A stretch of 64,000 nt of DNA from Kudoa neothunni. Lineage: Eukaryota > Animalia > Cnidaria. How positions within the stretch are numbered: position 1 is the stretch's first letter; each line of letters opens with the position of its first letter. Under the pieces are notes generated by a model. The model was given only the letters and a program-made list of their open reading frames with translations. It was not told the origin of the DNA and ran no database searches. The translations under genes and the position numbers were made by a program. The DNA is taken from NCBI GenBank assembly GCA_964304625.1, contig OZ199838.1, positions 12,006,524 through 12,070,523 of the forward strand, given 5' to 3'. Positions 34,217-63,320 of the stretch are shown here, in pieces.

Positions 34217-34325
34217 TAACCAGGCCATAATAAGGAATCTACTGAGCATTACTAAAGTCTTTCGTGGATTATCGCTGGTGAACGACTTCTGAGCTATTTG
34301 CCGTCTGGAGCTCAACAAAATTTTT

Positions 34326-34361
34326 ATGCAAATATTAATATACGTTAAGAAACCACCCTAA
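34326..34361 (+). promoter_or_regulatory. Candidate regulatory uORF MQILIYVKKPP* in the AdoMetDC leader
   Basis: ATG CAA ATA TTA ATA TAC GTT AAG AAA CCA CCC TAA. Weak start context (tttATGc). Ends 23 nt before the main ATG. Frame is open upstream to 34293, including a CTG at 34305. Confidence 0.55.
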
Positions 34362-34384
34362 TATTTGAAGGTAGTAGTATAGAA

Positions 34385-35732
34385 ATGTATTCGATTTTGG
34401 AGAGTGATAGCGGTGCCGAGTTTGATGTCTTTTTCGAGGGGACTGAAAAGTTACTAGAGGTGTGGTTTACCTTCGATACTAACAGGGAGCCCTGCAAAAG
34501 TGATCTTCGTCTGATACCTCGGTAGGTTTTGATTGGTGCCAATATTTAATGTTATATGGTTTTGGTTATAGAGCCGCAATTGATTCTATTCTCGACCATA
34601 TCGGAGCTAAAATAATCAGTCACTCCAAGTCACAATGTTGGGATGGTTACGTCCTATCGGAGAGTAGCCTGTTTATTTCTAAAAACAGAATCATCCTAAA
34701 AACATGCGGTTCAACCACACTACTGCTTGGTCTTCAGCCATTTATTGTTGCGGCCTTCAAGCACACATCTGCTAATGCAATATCGAATTTATTCTATTCC
34801 AGAAAATCAATGCTTAAACCAGATCAACAATTTTATCCTCATCTCGACTTTGATTCGGAAACCGAATTTCTAAAGAAGCATTTTCCAGATGGCGTATCTC
34901 ATAATTTCGGTGAGAATTCGGTTGATAAGAATAACGAATGGGTTGTGTTTGTGTACGAAAACCCATCAATGTAATAGGTCATATTGTGGCCGAGTTTAAT
35001 CTATAAGATTGTTACGTTTAGTGATGTTGCTGACCATTGCAACAAATGTGATTCAAGCTGTTCTGTTGAGCTATTGATGAGTGACTTGGATGTTATGTTG
35101 GCTGCAAATTTCCACAAATATCCAAATTATAACAACTCTCCTTCGATGTCTAGAGCCAATACTACTACTGATAGTATGGACGACAGTGGATACTACCATA
35201 ATGAATCTGATATCGGTAATTCACTGCTTCGCCCTTTCTCACCAACAAAAAAAGCCCGCTCTATGTTTTATGTAGGTTGCCAATAAAGTTTTGTTATCTT
35301 ATTAATGTGATTGATTGAATAGAGATCGGGTTTGGTGAATGTTTTCAACAAATGTGATATTGTTGATTTTGCCGAGTTCGACCCACTCGGTTTGTCTGTA
35401 AATGTGGTCAATGATCAAATTTACCATACTATCCACGTCACACCACAACAACTGTGCTCATACGCTAGTTATGAAACCAATCTGTGCAGTGAAGGATGGA
35501 TGTGCAATTTACGTCACGTCGTCAATGTCTTTATGCCTAAATCATTTGTTATGAATGCGTTTGTTTTGAATGTATGTTGTGTTGGGTGATTGCTGAACGC
35601 ATTTTATACGTCACTTTTTAGCCACTTGAGTCACCCGAATCGTTCCATCCAAACTATAGATTGCAACATTGTGATTACTTGAAAAGCGCAGGCTATCAAA
35701 TATTCTATGGGTTTTATGTGAAATGTGATTGA
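34385..35732 (+). CDS. AMD1: S-adenosylmethionine decarboxylase proenzyme (eukaryotic type), 5 exons
   Basis: FFEGTEKLLEVWF, DLRLIPR, self-cleavage site YVLSE/SSLF, ILKTCG, FYSRK, Q.YPH, TIHVTP, SYASYETN. GT-AG introns near 34522-34571, 34971-35021, 35272-35322 and 35572-35621. Stop TGA at 35730-35732. Confidence 0.96.
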
Positions 35733-52702: not shown

Positions 52703-55700
52703 GGCAGTGGCTATTGACACGCTAATGAATTTCTCGGCAATCATTAGATATTTTACATTAGTTAATTTCTAGTATTAATTAGTACATTTTTTCATACAAG
52801 ATTTGAAACTTATGATAAAAAATATTGAATATTAACATTATACCTATGAGCGTAGATTTTGGTATTTTCCATCCTTAATGCAACTATACAAGCTTCCAAC
52901 GCGCATTTAAACATTTAAGTGAGATAATATTAACTTTTTTTGAAATAAAATAAGTTCCTTTTAACTACAGAAGAGAAGTTTTAGTTGATAATATCATGTA
53001 ATTGGTTTGCGAATAGAGTAAGCTTTGATATGTAAATCAACATAATCATTATAGAATAGATAATCTGAATTTGATTATATTGTTTTATTTATTTTGATAA
53101 ATTTTCAATTTTTAGATCGTTTTCTTGACCATTTAAGAGCGGTTAATCCGTATCCTCTGGGTCTCCCAACTTCTTTTACTTTTTTGGGCAATATAAGATC
53201 TAAATAATAATTATTACAATAAAAGAAGATGCAAACCTTTTATTCCCAAACATTCTGTAGACTTGTCACCAGTTGAGTCATTTTGGGGCTGCGATGATTC
53301 GGGAGTTTCCTTTAGTTTAATTGGTGATATGGAGACTACACATGTTTCGGGCTGGTGGTTACTTTCAGACAAGCCCTTTATGACATTTGCATTCTCACCT
53401 AATTTAGTATAATTAACATCTGTAAATAGGTTTAAAAAGTTATCACTCTTACAAGGGGATGGTGACTCGACTATATCCGTATCTACATTGCATTCTGTGG
53501 ATGAATCAAGAATCTTTGCTGACTCTAAAAATAATCATTATGTCAGTAGATAATAATGTATATTTGTTAATTTCTTTAAACCGACTAGGTTATGGCTTTT
53601 AATTATTCTTTCTGAGGTTCGAAAATATTCTACACAGCAGTTGAAATATTCACCACAATATTCCGCAGCACTTGTTGCTAATTTGTCTATATACACATTA
53701 GCGGTTTTCATTCGCTTGGAAAAAGTTGAGAGGTTTTCCGAATTCTTCTTTTTTACTATAGACCCTGTTAAATTGTTTTTTACTGTATTTATTTTAGTAT
53801 TTTCTTTAATAATTTTTGAAATACGATCTTTTCTCCATCTTAAACGACACAGTTGGGGTTCGAACAGGGGCATCAATAATTTAAGTCAGAGCGAATATGT
53901 GCTGGCAGGGCAATTGGTAAGAACGATAGAAGGGGCACGTACAAGAATTTGAAGTGGAGTCATACTCTATTCCAACATTAAATTTATCTCCCATTTTTTT
54001 AATTTCTTTGGTTATTAGTTTAAAAGAAAATGATGTCAAAAGATCGCAGTAATTTCTTTCTACCTCACTCTCAATATTTAAACGCGTCGATTTTGACAGT
54101 TCTGTCACAATATGGCATGTCCTTTCTGTTCTTAGAGAATTTAAACGGTGAAAAATTTCTCAAAGAATTCATCTAATCTAGAAAATTTTTTAATGGTGGT
54201 CTTTAATTTGGAGTTGAGGCATGCCAATCTATTGTTTGTTAGGTTGTCGTAATAGTGTCTCGCATCACTCAAAGAAATTATCCATTGTGACCGAATTGGG
54301 TCCCAATTTTTTCTGAAATAATCGTTGAAGTCTTCATATTTGTGATTGTATAGTTCAGCAAGTAAGATTTGGTATTGCTCTTCGTTTTTCGAAAACATCA
54401 TTTTTCTAATAATATCTAAAATATTATCTTTGACTTCATTTTTTATCTTATATTTAGCAAGTCTCAATTGTCGCTGGAACGTCTGTATTACATGAAATTT
54501 ACAGAGAATTAATGTAGAATTAGTAAAATGATTTTTCAGAGCTTTACGAAGTTTTAAATCCTTATCAGTAACAATGGACAGTACTGATTGTTTTATCCAC
54601 AGTACAATTGATATTAGTTCATCGATATACCAGTTGGTAACAGCTTCAGTTTCCTCATACATAATGCAGGCACTACTTACATGAGATAAACCCATAGAAT
54701 CTTCTGAAACCGTTAGATACAGGGGAGCACTACAATTTAAGGAGATAAACATTAATAAAAATAGGTCAAATAAAACAAGATAACATTCGTAAAAATTACC
54801 GTGAATCTAGTAGTTTGTAGGTTGCATCAACTAAAAGTAGCTCTGGGAAAAAAGAAAAAACCTTCTTCATTTCATCATCCAGGAGTAATATTGCATCAAC
54901 TTGATTGTTTTCGTCAGCCAATATTCTCACATCACAATTATAATCAACGTTGAACAATTGATGAATATAGTTGATATCATTTATTTTATTCGACATATTT
55001 ATTTTGGAATTGTGTATTGATTTCAATGTAATTTTTTTCCCGGTCTCTTGTTGGATTTTAGATTGCAGCAATTTTTTGTTGACTCCCAAAGAAACTAACT
55101 CTGTATTAAATCTTTATTCTTATCCAATTTACGTTGCGGTGGCAAATAACTGAGAAAAATTTCATTTCTTGCGTGATTATGATCCAAATTCAAGGATTTC
55201 ACTTTAAGTGTTTGTCCATCGGGACTAATACTCAAGGATACATGAACCGGACAGTTTCCTTTTAAAGTCTGACATTGTCTTATACCTTTTGATCGGTATC
55301 GATACTGATTGCTAAAATAGCATACATATTTTATTGAACAATAGATTAAATCCTCATTGAACGCTTTAATGAGAATTCGCTTGATATTGCTAATTTTTTT
55401 GGAATCTCGCGTCATTAGGTTGCTGTAAGTCTTCTGTTCGTATAATTTTATGGAATCTCCAAGATGCTTAAATGAGGTAAACTTTTTCCCCACTTCAAAA
55501 ATATCAGTTCCTATGTTATCCTCCATCGCACTTGTTTGCGCAGGAGTTATCTGTGTAAAACTTAAATATTTCTTTTCAGCTAAGTAATTTACATTCGACC
55601 TGATAGTTAATGAATTATATTTGAAAAAAACTAACAATATGAAGTGTCATGAGTTGTTAGATACGACTTAATAAACATTAAACAGAATAAATTATTTGAT

Positions 55701-61255: not shown

Positions 61256-63320
61256 CCCATATAGACTCGGTGCCCTTTGTCTTTGAGTTACAGAGCTATA
61301 ATTTTACAAGTATTCTCAAAATACATTTGTGATCTACACATTTTTAAATAAAAATACTATTTTTATTTTTACATACTTTTTATCATGTTGCGTTAACGCA
61401 ACATATAATCTACATTGACCATAGGGATTAACGGATGAAATATATCTATAATCGTATACATATTTTTTTAAACAACACGCATGAAAATAGTAAAATAATT
61501 GAGTATAAGGTATTAGTAAATGAAGTTCGTTAAAATAAGTGGGGTGACACGGCAAACCACCACAATATTGGACTTGCAAATTTTTCATCTTGTCCCTTTT
61601 CATCCACACATCGCATCGCTCAATGGTTCTATCGCCACATAAATTGCGTGGAAATTGGAAAGATACTGAGAACATGCGTTTTCTGGTTGTATCGAATTTG
61701 ACAGTCAAAATTTGGACACCAGTGGTGTTCTTCGAAGCATAAGGGAATCCCCAGTGTCAGGATGGAGCAATTTAAATATTTTTTGTGAATTGAAAACTGC
61801 CATGCCGATATAATTGCAAAATATATTCCAATACCACTTTTTCCAGATATCAAAATTCTGTAGGTGGCGATAGCTGAAGCGAGGGAATCAACGCCAACCA
61901 TATAACGGTAAAAGCTGGCAACAATGTTTGGCATTGGAATATATACATCACTTTTATTACCCTTAGAATACCTTCTGGCATTCTTTATTGGTGTAATTTG
62001 AACAAAATTTGTTCCTATAATAACTGGCCTGGTATCGTTCCATTTGACCAACATCACTTTGTCGGTAGTGTACGATTCAAAGAAACCACGATTTTCTTTT
62101 TTGAAAACGGTGTCGCATGCAAATGGACACTTCATGGTCCTATTTTGTTGAATTGAACTGGTGGCTTCTATGTTTAAAGAAGACAGGTGGTTTAAAAATC
62201 CTATTGAGATGAAGAAATTGTCGAAACAAAACTCGTAGAGTCTAGGATATTCGACCAATTTCACAAAGTTTTTTACGACACTCCCACCTAGCTCCAATTT
62301 CATATCTAAGTTTGTTCCGTTTTCACAATAAATGTCTGTGATGAAAACATAGCCATAGTACGAATAAAGACGCCAAAATCTAAAACCAACTTTTACTGGT
62401 TAACATTTTATATACATTTTTGCGGAATGATGTCCAAAATAAGGTATCATTTGTTCGTTGATAGAGAGACGTCTCGAAAAGTAACCGCATCGTTGAAGGT
62501 TTTGGTTCATGATGTTTATATAATTTCTAACTTTAAACAAGCGATCATTTTTATATGCATCATCATCAGAAAATAAATTATTGTTGCATATGTGAATATA
62601 TTTTTTTATTTGTGTGAATTTTTAGTAGGATATACATTTCTTTACTGGTTTAACACCGTAATCCATACCTTCTTCCCAATACATTCGTTGCATTGGGCGA
62701 CGGTTATAACCACTCAATACCAAAATTCCGATAAAATTCATCAATTCATTTTTTTCAATATCAAAATCGTTATTTTGACCGGCGTATGTGACACTTTCTT
62801 TAATAATCCAATTTAAAACACTGGAGTCAACGAACAATTAAAAAATCTCGCGTTCGTCCATTGTAACAATCATGGGTTCAAATTTATCCAAATAAAAGTC
62901 ACAACTATCTAACAAATAATTAAGATGATGTATAAAACCCCTTTCGTTTATACCATTCGGAGAAATATCTGTATATCTATTGGATATACAGTAGTGGGTC
63001 GGTCGTATGTAATCCCCTTGGGGATGAGGAAATTGTACGTACTTTTTTACGCACACGCGCGAAAATATTAAAACAAATGACTAGTTATAACTTTAACATT
63101 ACTGAAAACAAGTTATTTTTTGTTTAAAAATACTATTTAAAATTGAAAAAACATAAAAAACAGAATCAGATATTAACCCCTGTTTCTTTAAGCCATGCTG
63201 TTTAAAATAGTTGTCAAGCTCTTCTAAGTAAAATAACGCAGTCTTTGTAAGGTTCATTATTTTATCAATAAAATCATCTTTCTTTTCTGAATCTTTGGAG
63301 AGAGGATGTCATGGCTCCAT
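61256..63320 (-). mobile_element. piggyBac (PGBD2/PGBD3-like) transposase pseudogene with one terminus
   Basis: TTAA-CCCATATAGACTC end at 61252. Motifs FIGILVLSGYN..P..RMYW, LSI(N)EQMIPYFGHHSAKMYIK, FDNFF, VKWND, YMVGVD and a C-terminal Cys-rich domain. Stops and frameshifts. Confidence 0.92.

What the first reader, a model, noticed from the sequence alone, without database searches (positions are those of the whole stretch)
34293..34387. Weak-start uORF ending Lys-Lys-Pro-Pro-stop just upstream of AdoMetDC: candidate polyamine-sensing translational switch
Seen: uORF MQILIYVKKPP* (34326-34361) with a poor start context (tttATGc). It can be extended in frame to a near-cognate CTG at 34305, and it ends 23 nt before the main ATG, which has a better context (gaaATG). 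Established: polyamine-pathway mRNAs are feedback-repressed by uORF stalling (mammalian AMD1 MAGDIS, the plant AdoMetDC small uORF ending PS-stop, the AZIN1 uORF with PPW, yeast HOL1 MLLLPS-stop). The AZIN1 and HOL1 proline motifs depend on eIF5A, which high polyamine levels inhibit, and in AZIN1 ribosome queuing boosts a weak start. Inference: this peptide is unlike MAGDIS and may be a lineage-specific PP-stop sensor that tunes spermidine synthesis. A short uORF can arise by chance, but CCA-CCC directly before the stop is rare in DNA this AT-rich.
Basis: partly seen in the sequence, partly recalled or inferred. Interest (0 to 1): 0.8.

Follow-up and report, generated by a model that had tools for sequence, protein, structure and literature searches.

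The report
Conserved Pro-Pro-stop uORF before AdoMetDC
The tiny upstream reading frame in front of this parasite's spermidine-pathway gene (AdoMetDC) is real and is conserved, ending in Pro-Pro-stop, across myxozoan parasites and jellyfish relatives, so it is very probably a translational brake of a known general kind, although its response to polyamines is untested.

Summary
An 11-codon ATG ORF, MQILIYVKKPP-TAA, lies at 34326-34361. It ends 23 nt before the ATG (34385) of a five-exon, single-copy AdoMetDC gene.

It is not a chance ORF:
- All five other loci in the same AdoMetDC clade, which contains the named myxozoans Henneguya and Thelohanellus, carry a frame ending (R/S/I)K-I-P-P-stop, from 1 nt of overlap to 25 nt before the main ATG. 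Four of these open with ATG and are 10-11 codons long; the fifth has no ATG.
- In the last five codons, variation sits at third codon positions (0/1/5 by position). The flanks do not align.
- Hydra vulgaris and seven hydrozoan-like contigs from six organisms carry a longer version, ...Y-I-K-Q-F-P-P-TAA. One of these contigs has a poly(A) tail, so there the uORF is in mature mRNA.
- Every uORF ATG has a pyrimidine at -3 (11/11). The main ATGs have a purine there in 11/13.

It is a conserved-peptide PP-stop uORF with a selected weak start. It is cnidarian-wide (Medusozoa plus Myxozoa), not species-specific. It also fits Ivanov et al. 2010, who noted metazoan AdoMetDC uORFs with a penultimate proline.

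No RNA reads exist for this organism. Polyamine and eIF5A dependence is inferred by analogy.

I rate it a new member of a known kind, of moderate interest.

The parts
34323..34329 (+). Weak initiation context of the uORF (tttATGc: pyrimidine at -3, C at +4)
   Evidence: A pyrimidine at -3 is found at 11 of 11 family uORF ATGs, against a purine at 11 of 13 main ATGs; Fisher p = 3e-5.
34326..34361 (+). Conserved-peptide uORF, 11 codons plus TAA: MQILIYVKKPP*
   Evidence: Orthologous uORFs are in L001, L066, Henneguya L064, Thelohanellus L065, L067, Hydra L061, L016, L020, L026, L045, L055 and L074/L076.
34347..34361 (+). Conserved C-terminal core K-K-P-P-stop (aag aaa cca ccc taa), the proposed termination-stall site
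   Evidence: Across six myxozoan-clade loci the variable sites fall 0/1/5 at codon positions 1/2/3. The last 15 nt are 80% identical, against about 32% in the flanks.
34362..34384 (+). 23-nt spacer between the uORF stop and the main start; it contains no ATG
   Evidence: Spacers in the myxozoan relatives are -1, 7, 15, 19 and 25 nt.
34385..34521 (+). AdoMetDC exon 1 (main ATG gaaATGt; FFEGTEKLLEVWF motif)
   Evidence: SAM_decarbox, E = 3.9e-5.
34572..34970 (+). AdoMetDC exon 2 (proenzyme cleavage motif LSESS; KTCG)
   Evidence: (E = 3.4e-38).
35022..35271 (+). AdoMetDC exon 3 (lineage-specific low-complexity insert, no Pfam match)
   Evidence: The exon boundaries were read from GT..AG sites and the reading frame.
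35323..35571 (+). AdoMetDC exon 4
   Evidence: E = 4e-20.
35622..35732 (+). AdoMetDC exon 5, ending in the TGA stop
   Evidence: from the reading frame and the splice sites.

Best explanation
The ORF at 34326-34361 is the ortholog, in this myxozoan genome, of an old cnidarian conserved-peptide uORF in the AdoMetDC leader. Medusozoa carry a 14-16-codon form, M-Q-...-Y-I-K-Q-F-P-P-TAA. Myxozoa carry a 10-11-codon form, hydrophobic stretch-(R/S)-K-(I/K)-P-P-stop.

Proposed mechanism (inferred):
1. Most scanning 43S complexes pass the uORF AUG because its context is deliberately poor, and they start at the AdoMetDC AUG.
2. The ribosomes that do translate the uORF terminate slowly at Pro-Pro-stop, a step that needs eIF5A.
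3. When spermidine is high, eIF5A action is impaired and the terminating 80S stalls. Because the stop lies only -1 to 25 nt from the main AUG, the stalled ribosome blocks or covers that AUG, and AdoMetDC synthesis falls. This is negative feedback.
4. In four of the five ATG-started myxozoan uORFs, the AUG lies exactly 30 nt (one ribosome footprint) upstream of the last Pro codon. A 43S queued behind the stalled ribosome would therefore sit on the weak AUG and reinforce the block.

Shown here: the ORF exists, its peptide-level features are conserved, its weak start context is conserved, and it sits tightly against the main ATG. Inferred: that it is translated in this species, that ribosomes stall on it, and that the stall depends on polyamines and eIF5A.
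For: 1. Conservation in relatives. L001, the closest relative (62% identity in exon 2), has MLIIFHSKIPP* with its stop overlapping the main ATG. Henneguya has MLFLYSRKIPP*, Thelohanellus MFFFTIKIPP*, L066 MLIIIIRKIPP*, and L067 ...GYSRKIPP-tag.
2. Clade. These six loci form one clade with 97/96 support on the exon-2 region. Henneguya and Thelohanellus are among the top named hits for exon 2.
3. Coding-type substitution. In the last five codons, 0/1/5 sites vary at codon positions 1/2/3. The Pro codons are cca, cct or ccc, Lys is aaa or aag, and the stop is taa or tag. Flanks are 32% identical against 80% in the core.
4. Medusozoan homologs. Hydra vulgaris has MQTLTVEYIKLFPP*. Six further organisms are represented by seven contigs, whose closest named relative is Hydra. 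L026 is intronless and has a poly(A) tail, so there the uORF is in mature mRNA.
5. Rarity. 2 of 1808 short ORFs in the window end in PP. Of 1295 short ORFs upstream of 58 metagenomic AdoMetDC genes, 8 end in PP, and 5 of those are the hydrozoan-like uORFs.
6. Start context. The uORF ATG has a pyrimidine at -3 in 11/11 cases; the main ATG has a purine in 11/13, p = 3e-5.
7. Pathway context. The genome encodes spermidine synthase, eIF5A, deoxyhypusine synthase and a single AdoMetDC.
8. Literature. AdoMetDC uORFs in metazoa carry a penultimate proline, and adjacent prolines affect termination (PMC2811004). High polyamines inhibit eIF5A-dependent termination at the AZIN1 and HOL1 (MLLLPS*) uORFs and termination at MAGDIS (PMC10855120). 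The queuing model needs a start-to-stall distance that is a multiple of 30 nt (PMC9648851).
Against: - There is no RNA evidence for this organism. Three metatranscriptomic runs with the same species label gave 0 reads on the locus, so the transcription start and the presence of the uORF in the mRNA are not shown.
- Other first-stage notes suspect spliced-leader trans-splicing in this genome (untested). TAG triplets lie between the uORF and the ATG.
- No experiment on any cnidarian uORF was found in the held library.
- The window's peptide has K, not I, before PP, and lacks the aromatic residue of the medusozoan form.
- L067 has no ATG at all, so in that lineage the uORF is either non-AUG-initiated or lost.
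- The 30-nt spacing does not hold in Thelohanellus (27 nt) or in Medusozoa (39-45 nt). Bottorff et al. found no queuing periodicity for the UL4 uORF2.
- A second hydrozoan AdoMetDC paralog and the one Nematostella locus read lack the PP-stop uORF.
Confidence: 0.65

Rival explanations
1. The uORF is translated and conserved, but it only dampens or buffers AdoMetDC translation constitutively. It siphons or blocks a fixed share of ribosomes and does not sense polyamines.
For: All the conservation data fit a fixed brake as well as a regulated one. Stalling uORFs can buffer output against ribosome loading without any ligand (PMC9648851). No polyamine data exist for any cnidarian.
Against: The element sits on the rate-limiting gene of spermidine synthesis. 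Elsewhere such uORFs are polyamine-responsive: MAGDIS and the plant small uORF, and HOL1 and AZIN1. Pro-Pro-stop is the kind of motif whose termination depends on eIF5A.
Confidence: 0.2
2. What is conserved is a nucleic-acid motif (AAR-AWA-CCN-CCY-TAR), such as a core-promoter, initiator or RNA-binding element close to the start codon, and the ORF around it is incidental.
For: The conserved core is only about 15 nt and pyrimidine-rich. It always lies close to the main ATG in Myxozoa. In L067 the core is present without an ATG.
Against: Variation is confined to third codon positions, and both TAA and TAG occur. An in-frame ATG 27-30 nt upstream is kept in 5 of 6 myxozoan loci although that region does not align. 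In Medusozoa the same peptide end lies 101-225 nt from the main ATG, inside transcribed leaders.
Confidence: 0.08
3. It is a chance ORF in AT-rich upstream DNA, or it lies outside the mature mRNA (upstream of the transcription start, or removed by cis- or trans-splicing).
For: No RNA reads. Short ORFs are abundant, 1808 in the window. TAG triplets at 34372-34382 could serve as acceptors. First-stage notes suspect trans-splicing in this genome.
Against: Expected frequency of a PP ending is about 1e-3 per short ORF, yet it recurs in all six myxozoan-clade loci and seven medusozoan-type organisms. L001 leaves no room for an acceptor, because its stop overlaps the ATG. The substitution pattern is coding-type.
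Confidence: 0.04
4. The uORF acts through regulated reinitiation, as in GCN4, and not through stalling.
For: Very short uORFs usually permit reinitiation. In L001 the stop and start overlap (UAAUG), a layout known for termination-reinitiation.
Against: Spacers of -1 to 25 nt are too short for efficient re-acquisition of the ternary complex (general knowledge). A reinitiation-only model would not need the strict Pro-Pro-stop or the weak uORF start.
Confidence: 0.03

Closest known systems
Metazoan, plant and algal AdoMetDC uORFs with a penultimate proline (Ivanov, Atkins & Michael 2010, NAR 38:353; PMC2811004)
   Same: A short conserved uORF in the AdoMetDC leader with proline at the penultimate position. 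The authors link adjacent prolines near the uORF end to slow termination and to polyamine-responsive repression.
   Different: The paper's supplementary alignments are not held here, so I cannot tell whether cnidarian or myxozoan sequences were included. The myxozoan form is far shorter (10-11 codons) and abuts the main ATG. No invertebrate member has been tested, as far as the held library shows.
Vertebrate AMD1 uORF MAGDIS
   Same: Same gene and the same logic: a very short uORF whose terminating ribosome stalls and blocks access to the AdoMetDC start in response to polyamines. A MAGDIS uORF was seen in the control locus L049.
   Different: There is no sequence similarity, and MAGDIS has no proline. 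MAGDIS relies on lying 14 nt from the cap; this uORF has a poor Kozak context and lies next to the main ATG.
Yeast HOL1 uORF MLLLPS-stop and AZIN1 uCC (PPW ... PS-stop), the eIF5A-dependent polyamine sensors
   Same: Proline-containing C-terminal motifs at or near the stop, a hydrophobic N-terminal part (MLLL- against MLII-, MLFL-, MQIL-), a weak or non-AUG start (AZIN1), and polyamine feedback through eIF5A. The queuing model applies.
   Different: The downstream genes differ (a transporter and antizyme inhibitor). The motif is PP-stop, not PS-stop. eIF5A dependence is not tested here.
Plant AdoMetDC tiny plus small uORF pair
   Same: Same gene, sequence-dependent repression, and a peptide ending in P-S-stop.
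   Different: The plant system has two overlapping uORFs, and the small one is 48-55 codons. Here there is one uORF of 11 codons.

Membership tests
AdoMetDC leader conserved-peptide uORF (Ivanov et al. 2010 class) | The uORF lies in the 5' leader of an AdoMetDC mRNA | tested here: inconclusive
   It lies 23 nt upstream of the AdoMetDC ATG on the same strand. No RNA reads were obtained for this organism. In a relative, the homologous uORF is inside a polyadenylated, intronless transcript contig (L026).
AdoMetDC leader conserved-peptide uORF (Ivanov et al. 2010 class) | The peptide sequence is conserved among species, with coding-type substitutions | tested here: met
   Six myxozoan-clade loci and seven medusozoan-type organisms carry it. 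Variable sites in the core fall 0/1/5 by codon position.
AdoMetDC leader conserved-peptide uORF (Ivanov et al. 2010 class) | Proline at the penultimate position | tested here: met
   All members end in P-P-stop.
AdoMetDC leader conserved-peptide uORF (Ivanov et al. 2010 class) | Polyamine-responsive, peptide-dependent repression of the main ORF | not testable with these tools
   This needs reporter, toeprint or ribosome-profiling experiments.
Vertebrate MAGDIS uORF | Hexapeptide MAGDIS (critical D-I-S end), about 14 nt from the cap | tested here: not met
   The peptide is MQILIYVKKPP. MAGDIS itself was recovered in the control locus L049.
eIF5A-dependent proline-stop uORF sensors (HOL1, AZIN1) | Pro-Ser-stop or PPW motif whose translation or termination needs eIF5A | tested here: inconclusive
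   The motif here is Pro-Pro-stop, not Pro-Ser-stop. The eIF5A and deoxyhypusine synthase genes are present in the genome. Dependence on them is not testable here.
eIF5A-dependent proline-stop uORF sensors (HOL1, AZIN1) | Weak or non-AUG start, so that uORF use can be modulated | tested here: met
   A pyrimidine at -3 and no G at +4 in 11/11 uORF ATGs. L067 has ATT where the others have ATG.
Plant AdoMetDC tiny/small uORF pair | Two overlapping uORFs, the small one 48-55 codons | tested here: not met
   There is a single 11-codon uORF. The nearest other upstream ATG ORFs end 168 nt or more before the main ATG.

The most novel reading that the evidence does not exclude
An ancient cnidarian AdoMetDC peptide uORF has been shrunk in the parasitic Myxozoa to a regulatory cassette of about 60 nt. 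In it the weak AUG sits exactly one ribosome footprint (30 nt) upstream of a Pro-Pro-stop stall site, and the stall site abuts or overlaps the main AUG. This would be a natural, self-reinforcing ribosome-queuing switch. One lineage (L067) has gone further, to a non-AUG (ATT) start.
Probability: 0.25. Interest if true: 0.7.

Novelty: new member of a known kind. Interest (0 to 1): 0.5.

Why it matters
AdoMetDC commits S-adenosylmethionine to spermidine synthesis, and its translation is feedback-controlled by uORFs in vertebrates and plants. This result shows that a different peptide uORF, ending in Pro-Pro-stop and carrying a conserved weak start, has been kept from Hydra-like cnidarians down to some of the most reduced animal genomes known, the Myxozoa. 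That argues for strong selection on translational control of polyamine synthesis.

The myxozoan version is unusually compact: 10-11 codons, and from 1 nt of overlap to 25 nt from the main start. The start-to-stall spacing equals one ribosome footprint in four of the five ATG-started myxozoan uORFs. This makes it a clean natural substrate for testing the eIF5A/polyamine termination-stall model and the ribosome-queuing model in vitro.

It also gives annotators of myxozoan and cnidarian genomes a concrete conserved small ORF to record.

Tried and rejected
- RNA evidence. The look-up of sequencing runs listed no RNA holder. Read laying on window:32600-36100 (3,501 letters, within the operators' limit) gave 0 reads from three metatranscriptomic runs with the same species label, and only DNA contigs from X1. 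This is no test of expression.
- Spliced-leader test. The Rfam SL1 (RF00198) search of the genome found nothing, but nothing rang in the controls either, so it is uninformative.
- Word search with exon 2. It gave only nine short hits because of the length filter. This justified the exhaustive search, which showed that only one close relative (P0001/L001) exists in the library.
- Taxon from other window genes. The long ORFs are transposase-like: MULE/ZSWIM and a piggyBac-type DDE. They are not useful for taxonomy.
- Old Biochem J papers on nematode AdoMetDC, and the Ivanov 2018 and Vindu 2021 Mol Cell papers, are not held. The supplement of Ivanov 2010 is not held either.
- Hydractinia (L062), a second hydrozoan paralog (L077-L079) and Nematostella (L063) have no PP-stop uORF near the start.
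- A nematode, mite or rotifer origin was considered from GC content and intron size, then dropped after the names and the tree.
- The spliced (joined) AdoMetDC protein was deliberately not assembled, searched or used for the tree. Exons were searched one by one by reference, and the tree uses the exon-2 region only.
Full report
**1. What is in the window**

One search shows atg caa ata tta ata tac gtt aag aaa cca ccc taa at 34326-34361, which reads MQILIYVKKPP*. The start context is tttATGc. An in-frame CTG lies at 34305, with no stop between it and the ATG. A 23-nt spacer without any ATG follows the stop, and the main start is gaaATGt at 34385.

The downstream gene reads MYSILESDSGAEFDVFFEGTEKLLEVWF... 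Its exons are 34385-34521, 34572-34970, 35022-35271, 35323-35571 and 35622-35732, separated by introns of about 50 nt. Exons 1, 2 and 4 match Pfam SAM_decarbox with E = 3.9e-5, 3.4e-38 and 4e-20. The proenzyme cleavage motif (YVLSESS) and the KTCG motif are present.

I searched the exons one by one by reference.

This is the only SAM_decarbox match in the genome, which is 40.26 Mb in 4 contigs.

**2. Is the ORF more than chance?**

Within the window, only 2 of 1808 ATG ORFs of 3-40 codons end in Pro-Pro, and one of them is this uORF. Base composition predicts about 5e-4 to 6.5e-4.

One ORF alone could still be an accident. The decisive evidence is comparative.

**3. Relatives**

*How the relatives were found.*
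- A word search with exon 2 found one close relative, P0001 (62% identity), on the Logan contig L001.
- The exhaustive HMMER search confirmed that it is the only close relative in 1.8 billion representatives.
- Among the next-best hits, the named invertebrates are Henneguya salminicola (P0132) and Thelohanellus kitauei (P0137), both Myxozoa.
- A maximum-likelihood tree on the exon-2 region alone puts the window, L001, L066, L067, Henneguya and Thelohanellus in one clade with 97/96 support.
- A follow-up note from another agent on this genome names the organism Kudoa neothunni. I did not verify the species, but a myxozoan origin agrees with my tree.

*The myxozoan-clade uORFs.* Every locus in the clade has the same element directly before its AdoMetDC start:

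| Locus | uORF | Stop | Distance from stop to main ATG |
|---|---|---|---|
| Window | MQILIYVKKPP* | TAA | 23 nt |
| L001 | MLIIFHSKIPP* | TAA | overlaps the ATG (taATG) |
| L066 | MLIIIIRKIPP* | TAG | 19 nt |
| Henneguya (L064) | MLFLYSRKIPP* | TAG | 25 nt |
| Thelohanellus (L065) | MFFFTIKIPP* | TAA | 15 nt |
| L067 | open frame ...IIQILFVHIGYSRKIPP, no ATG | TAG | 7 nt |

In L067, att caa att tta stands where the window has atg caa ata tta.

*Substitution pattern.* Across these six loci, the last five codons (K-I/K-P-P-stop) vary at 0, 1 and 5 sites in codon positions 1, 2 and 3. The codons seen are aaa/aag, ata/atc/aaa, cca/cct/ccc, ccc/cct and taa/tag. The 15-nt core is 80% identical, while the 13-15 nt on either side are about 32% identical, which is essentially random.

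It argues for selection on a translated peptide and its stop, not on a DNA motif.

**4. A longer homolog in Medusozoa**

A scan of metagenome contigs for the FEGTEKLLE(V/I/L)WF coding pattern returned 58 AdoMetDC loci.

*Members found.*

| Locus | uORF | Distance to main ATG |
|---|---|---|
| L016 | MNLSQIFFGYTKQYPP* | 101-225 nt (range for these five; per-locus gaps are) |
| L020 | MQPLLKVGGYIKQFPP* | as above |
| L026 | MQADQAVSYIKLFPP* | as above |
| L045 | MQSQGILAAYIKQFPP* | as above |
| L055 | MHLGQIFFGYLKQYPP* | as above |
| Hydra vulgaris genome (L061) | MQTLTVEYIKLFPP* | 155 nt |
| L074/L076 | MSCRRFTSYRKRFPP* | 196 nt |

- The five contigs are intronless, full-length contigs. L026 ends in a poly(A) tail.
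- Their closest named relative is Hydra vulgaris, at 61%.
- All of these uORFs stop with TAA.

*Alignment with the myxozoan form.* In a MAFFT alignment the myxozoan peptides line up with the two ends of the medusozoan ones: M-Q/L-x-L at the start and Y-x-K/R-x-(F/Y/I)-P-P at the end. L067 matches L020 over all 16 positions at Q2, L4, G9, Y10, P15 and P16.

*Negative controls.* In the other 53 metagenomic loci, only three unrelated short ORFs within 4 kb upstream end in PP, out of 1295 short ORFs counted across all 58 loci. A vertebrate-type locus shows MAGDIS* as expected (L049).

*Where it is absent.* A second hydrozoan paralog (Hydractinia L062; L077-L079) lacks the element, and so does the one Nematostella locus read.

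On present sampling, then, the family is shared by Medusozoa and Myxozoa, and it is not universal in Cnidaria.

**5. The weak start is conserved too**

All 11 uORF ATGs with known context have a pyrimidine at -3, and none has G at +4. The main ATGs have a purine at -3 in 11 of 13 cases (Fisher p = 3e-5, ignoring relatedness; the flanks are otherwise unalignable). The ATT in L067 points the same way.

**6. How it most likely works**

Established elsewhere:
- AdoMetDC uORFs repress the main ORF in response to polyamines. In vertebrates this works by stalling at termination of MAGDIS (PMC2811004).
- The same paper notes that uORFs occur in AdoMetDC leaders of diverse metazoa, and always with a penultimate proline except in vertebrates and the sea squirt. 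It also links adjacent prolines at the ORF end to impaired termination.
- High polyamines inhibit eIF5A-dependent termination on the AZIN1 uCC and on the yeast HOL1 MLLLPS* uORF (PMC10855120).
- In the queuing model, a stalled ribosome raises initiation at a weak upstream start only when the start-to-stall distance is a multiple of the 30-nt footprint (PMC9648851).

Inference for this locus:
- Leaky scanning past the poor uORF AUG feeds the AdoMetDC AUG.
- Ribosomes that do translate the uORF pause with Pro-11 in the P site and TAA in the A site.
- At high spermidine the pause lengthens. Because the stop is -1 to 25 nt from the main AUG in Myxozoa, the paused 80S covers or blocks the main start.
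- Four of the five ATG-started myxozoan uORFs have 11 codons. That places the AUG exactly 30 nt upstream of the last Pro codon, so a queued 43S would sit on the weak AUG and reinforce the block.

The genome encodes the needed partners: spermidine synthase, eIF5A and deoxyhypusine synthase.

Caveats: Thelohanellus has 27 nt, Medusozoa have 39-45 nt, and queuing periodicity was not seen for the UL4 uORF2.

**7. What is not shown**

No RNA data exist for this organism. The transcription start is therefore unknown.

First-stage notes elsewhere in this genome suspect spliced-leader trans-splicing. My SL1 search was uninformative.

I consider removal of the uORF by splicing unlikely, for three reasons. 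It shows coding-type conservation. In L001 the uORF stop overlaps the main ATG, and in L067 the spacer is 7 nt, which leaves no room for a shared acceptor. The homolog also lies in mature mRNA in a hydrozoan (L026).

**8. Comparison with known systems, and novelty**

This is not MAGDIS and not the plant tiny/small uORF pair. It shares the proline-at-the-stop logic of HOL1 and AZIN1, but with PP-stop in place of PS-stop.

It fits the class that Ivanov et al. 2010 described in one sentence and in supplementary figures that I could not read. I found no paper in the held library on a cnidarian or myxozoan AdoMetDC uORF.

I therefore rate it a new member of a known kind. The new points are its conservation into Myxozoa, its miniaturised geometry next to the main start, and a possible non-AUG variant.

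**9. Verdict**

A functional PP-stop uORF with a weak start is well supported. 'Lineage-specific' should read 'shared by Medusozoa and Myxozoa'. Polyamine sensing remains an inference.
- Confidence in the best explanation as a whole is about 0.65. That the ORF is a real, selected, translated element I put at about 0.9.
- Interest: 0.5.

Noticed in passing
L067:1294-1383: A myxozoan-clade contig (ERR9890981) keeps ...GYSRKIPP-tag 7 nt before its AdoMetDC ATG but has no ATG in the 29-codon open frame. ATT at 1333 aligns with the ATG of the window's uORF. This may be a non-AUG-initiated version, or a lost start.
   Followed up: partly
L012:2125-2226 and L018 (oriented) 1934-1963: Two AdoMetDC loci from an unidentified metazoan (N-terminus MATAGTQNFFEG) carry uORFs that begin MAGN... 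(MAGNRVRGK* in L018). The start is reminiscent of MAGDIS but the end differs.
   Followed up: no
L010, L044, L051, L057, L059 (leaders just upstream of the AdoMetDC ATG): Short transcript-like contigs from AT-rich organisms share the motif ATAGACAT 14-31 nt before the AdoMetDC ATG. It could be the end of a spliced leader or an initiator element. None of them has a uORF.
   Followed up: no
L015, L030, L039, L047, L054, L056 (about 220-235 nt upstream of the ATG): A group of genomic AdoMetDC loci (N-terminus MSNPFEGTEK) shares a different conserved upstream ORF, MHRTWS(K/R)(K/R)SMSRLCG*, with no proline at its end.
   Followed up: no
L063:5960-6085: Nematostella AdoMetDC has a 41-codon upstream ORF that overlaps the main start and ends ...NPS*. 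Its penultimate proline recalls the plant PS-stop. Conservation was not tested.
   Followed up: no
window 35022-35271: Exon 3 of the AdoMetDC gene encodes a Ser/Asn/Thr/Asp-rich insert. It has no Pfam match and no tblastn match in any of the 60 related loci. Another first-stage note (s1-712111) flags altered binding residues in this region.
   Followed up: no
window 54141-55637 (-) and 61629-62303 (-): These are transposase-like ORFs. One has a MULE domain plus ZSWIM3 N-terminal and RNaseH-like domains. The other has a piggyBac-type DDE_Tnp_1_7 domain.
   Followed up: no
L074:4-51, L076:9-56, L045 (oriented) 1-51, L020:15-65: In several hydrozoan-like transcript contigs the PP-stop uORF ATG lies within 0-14 nt of the contig's 5' end. 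This hints that the uORF may be cap-proximal (as MAGDIS is) or may directly follow a spliced leader.
   Followed up: no
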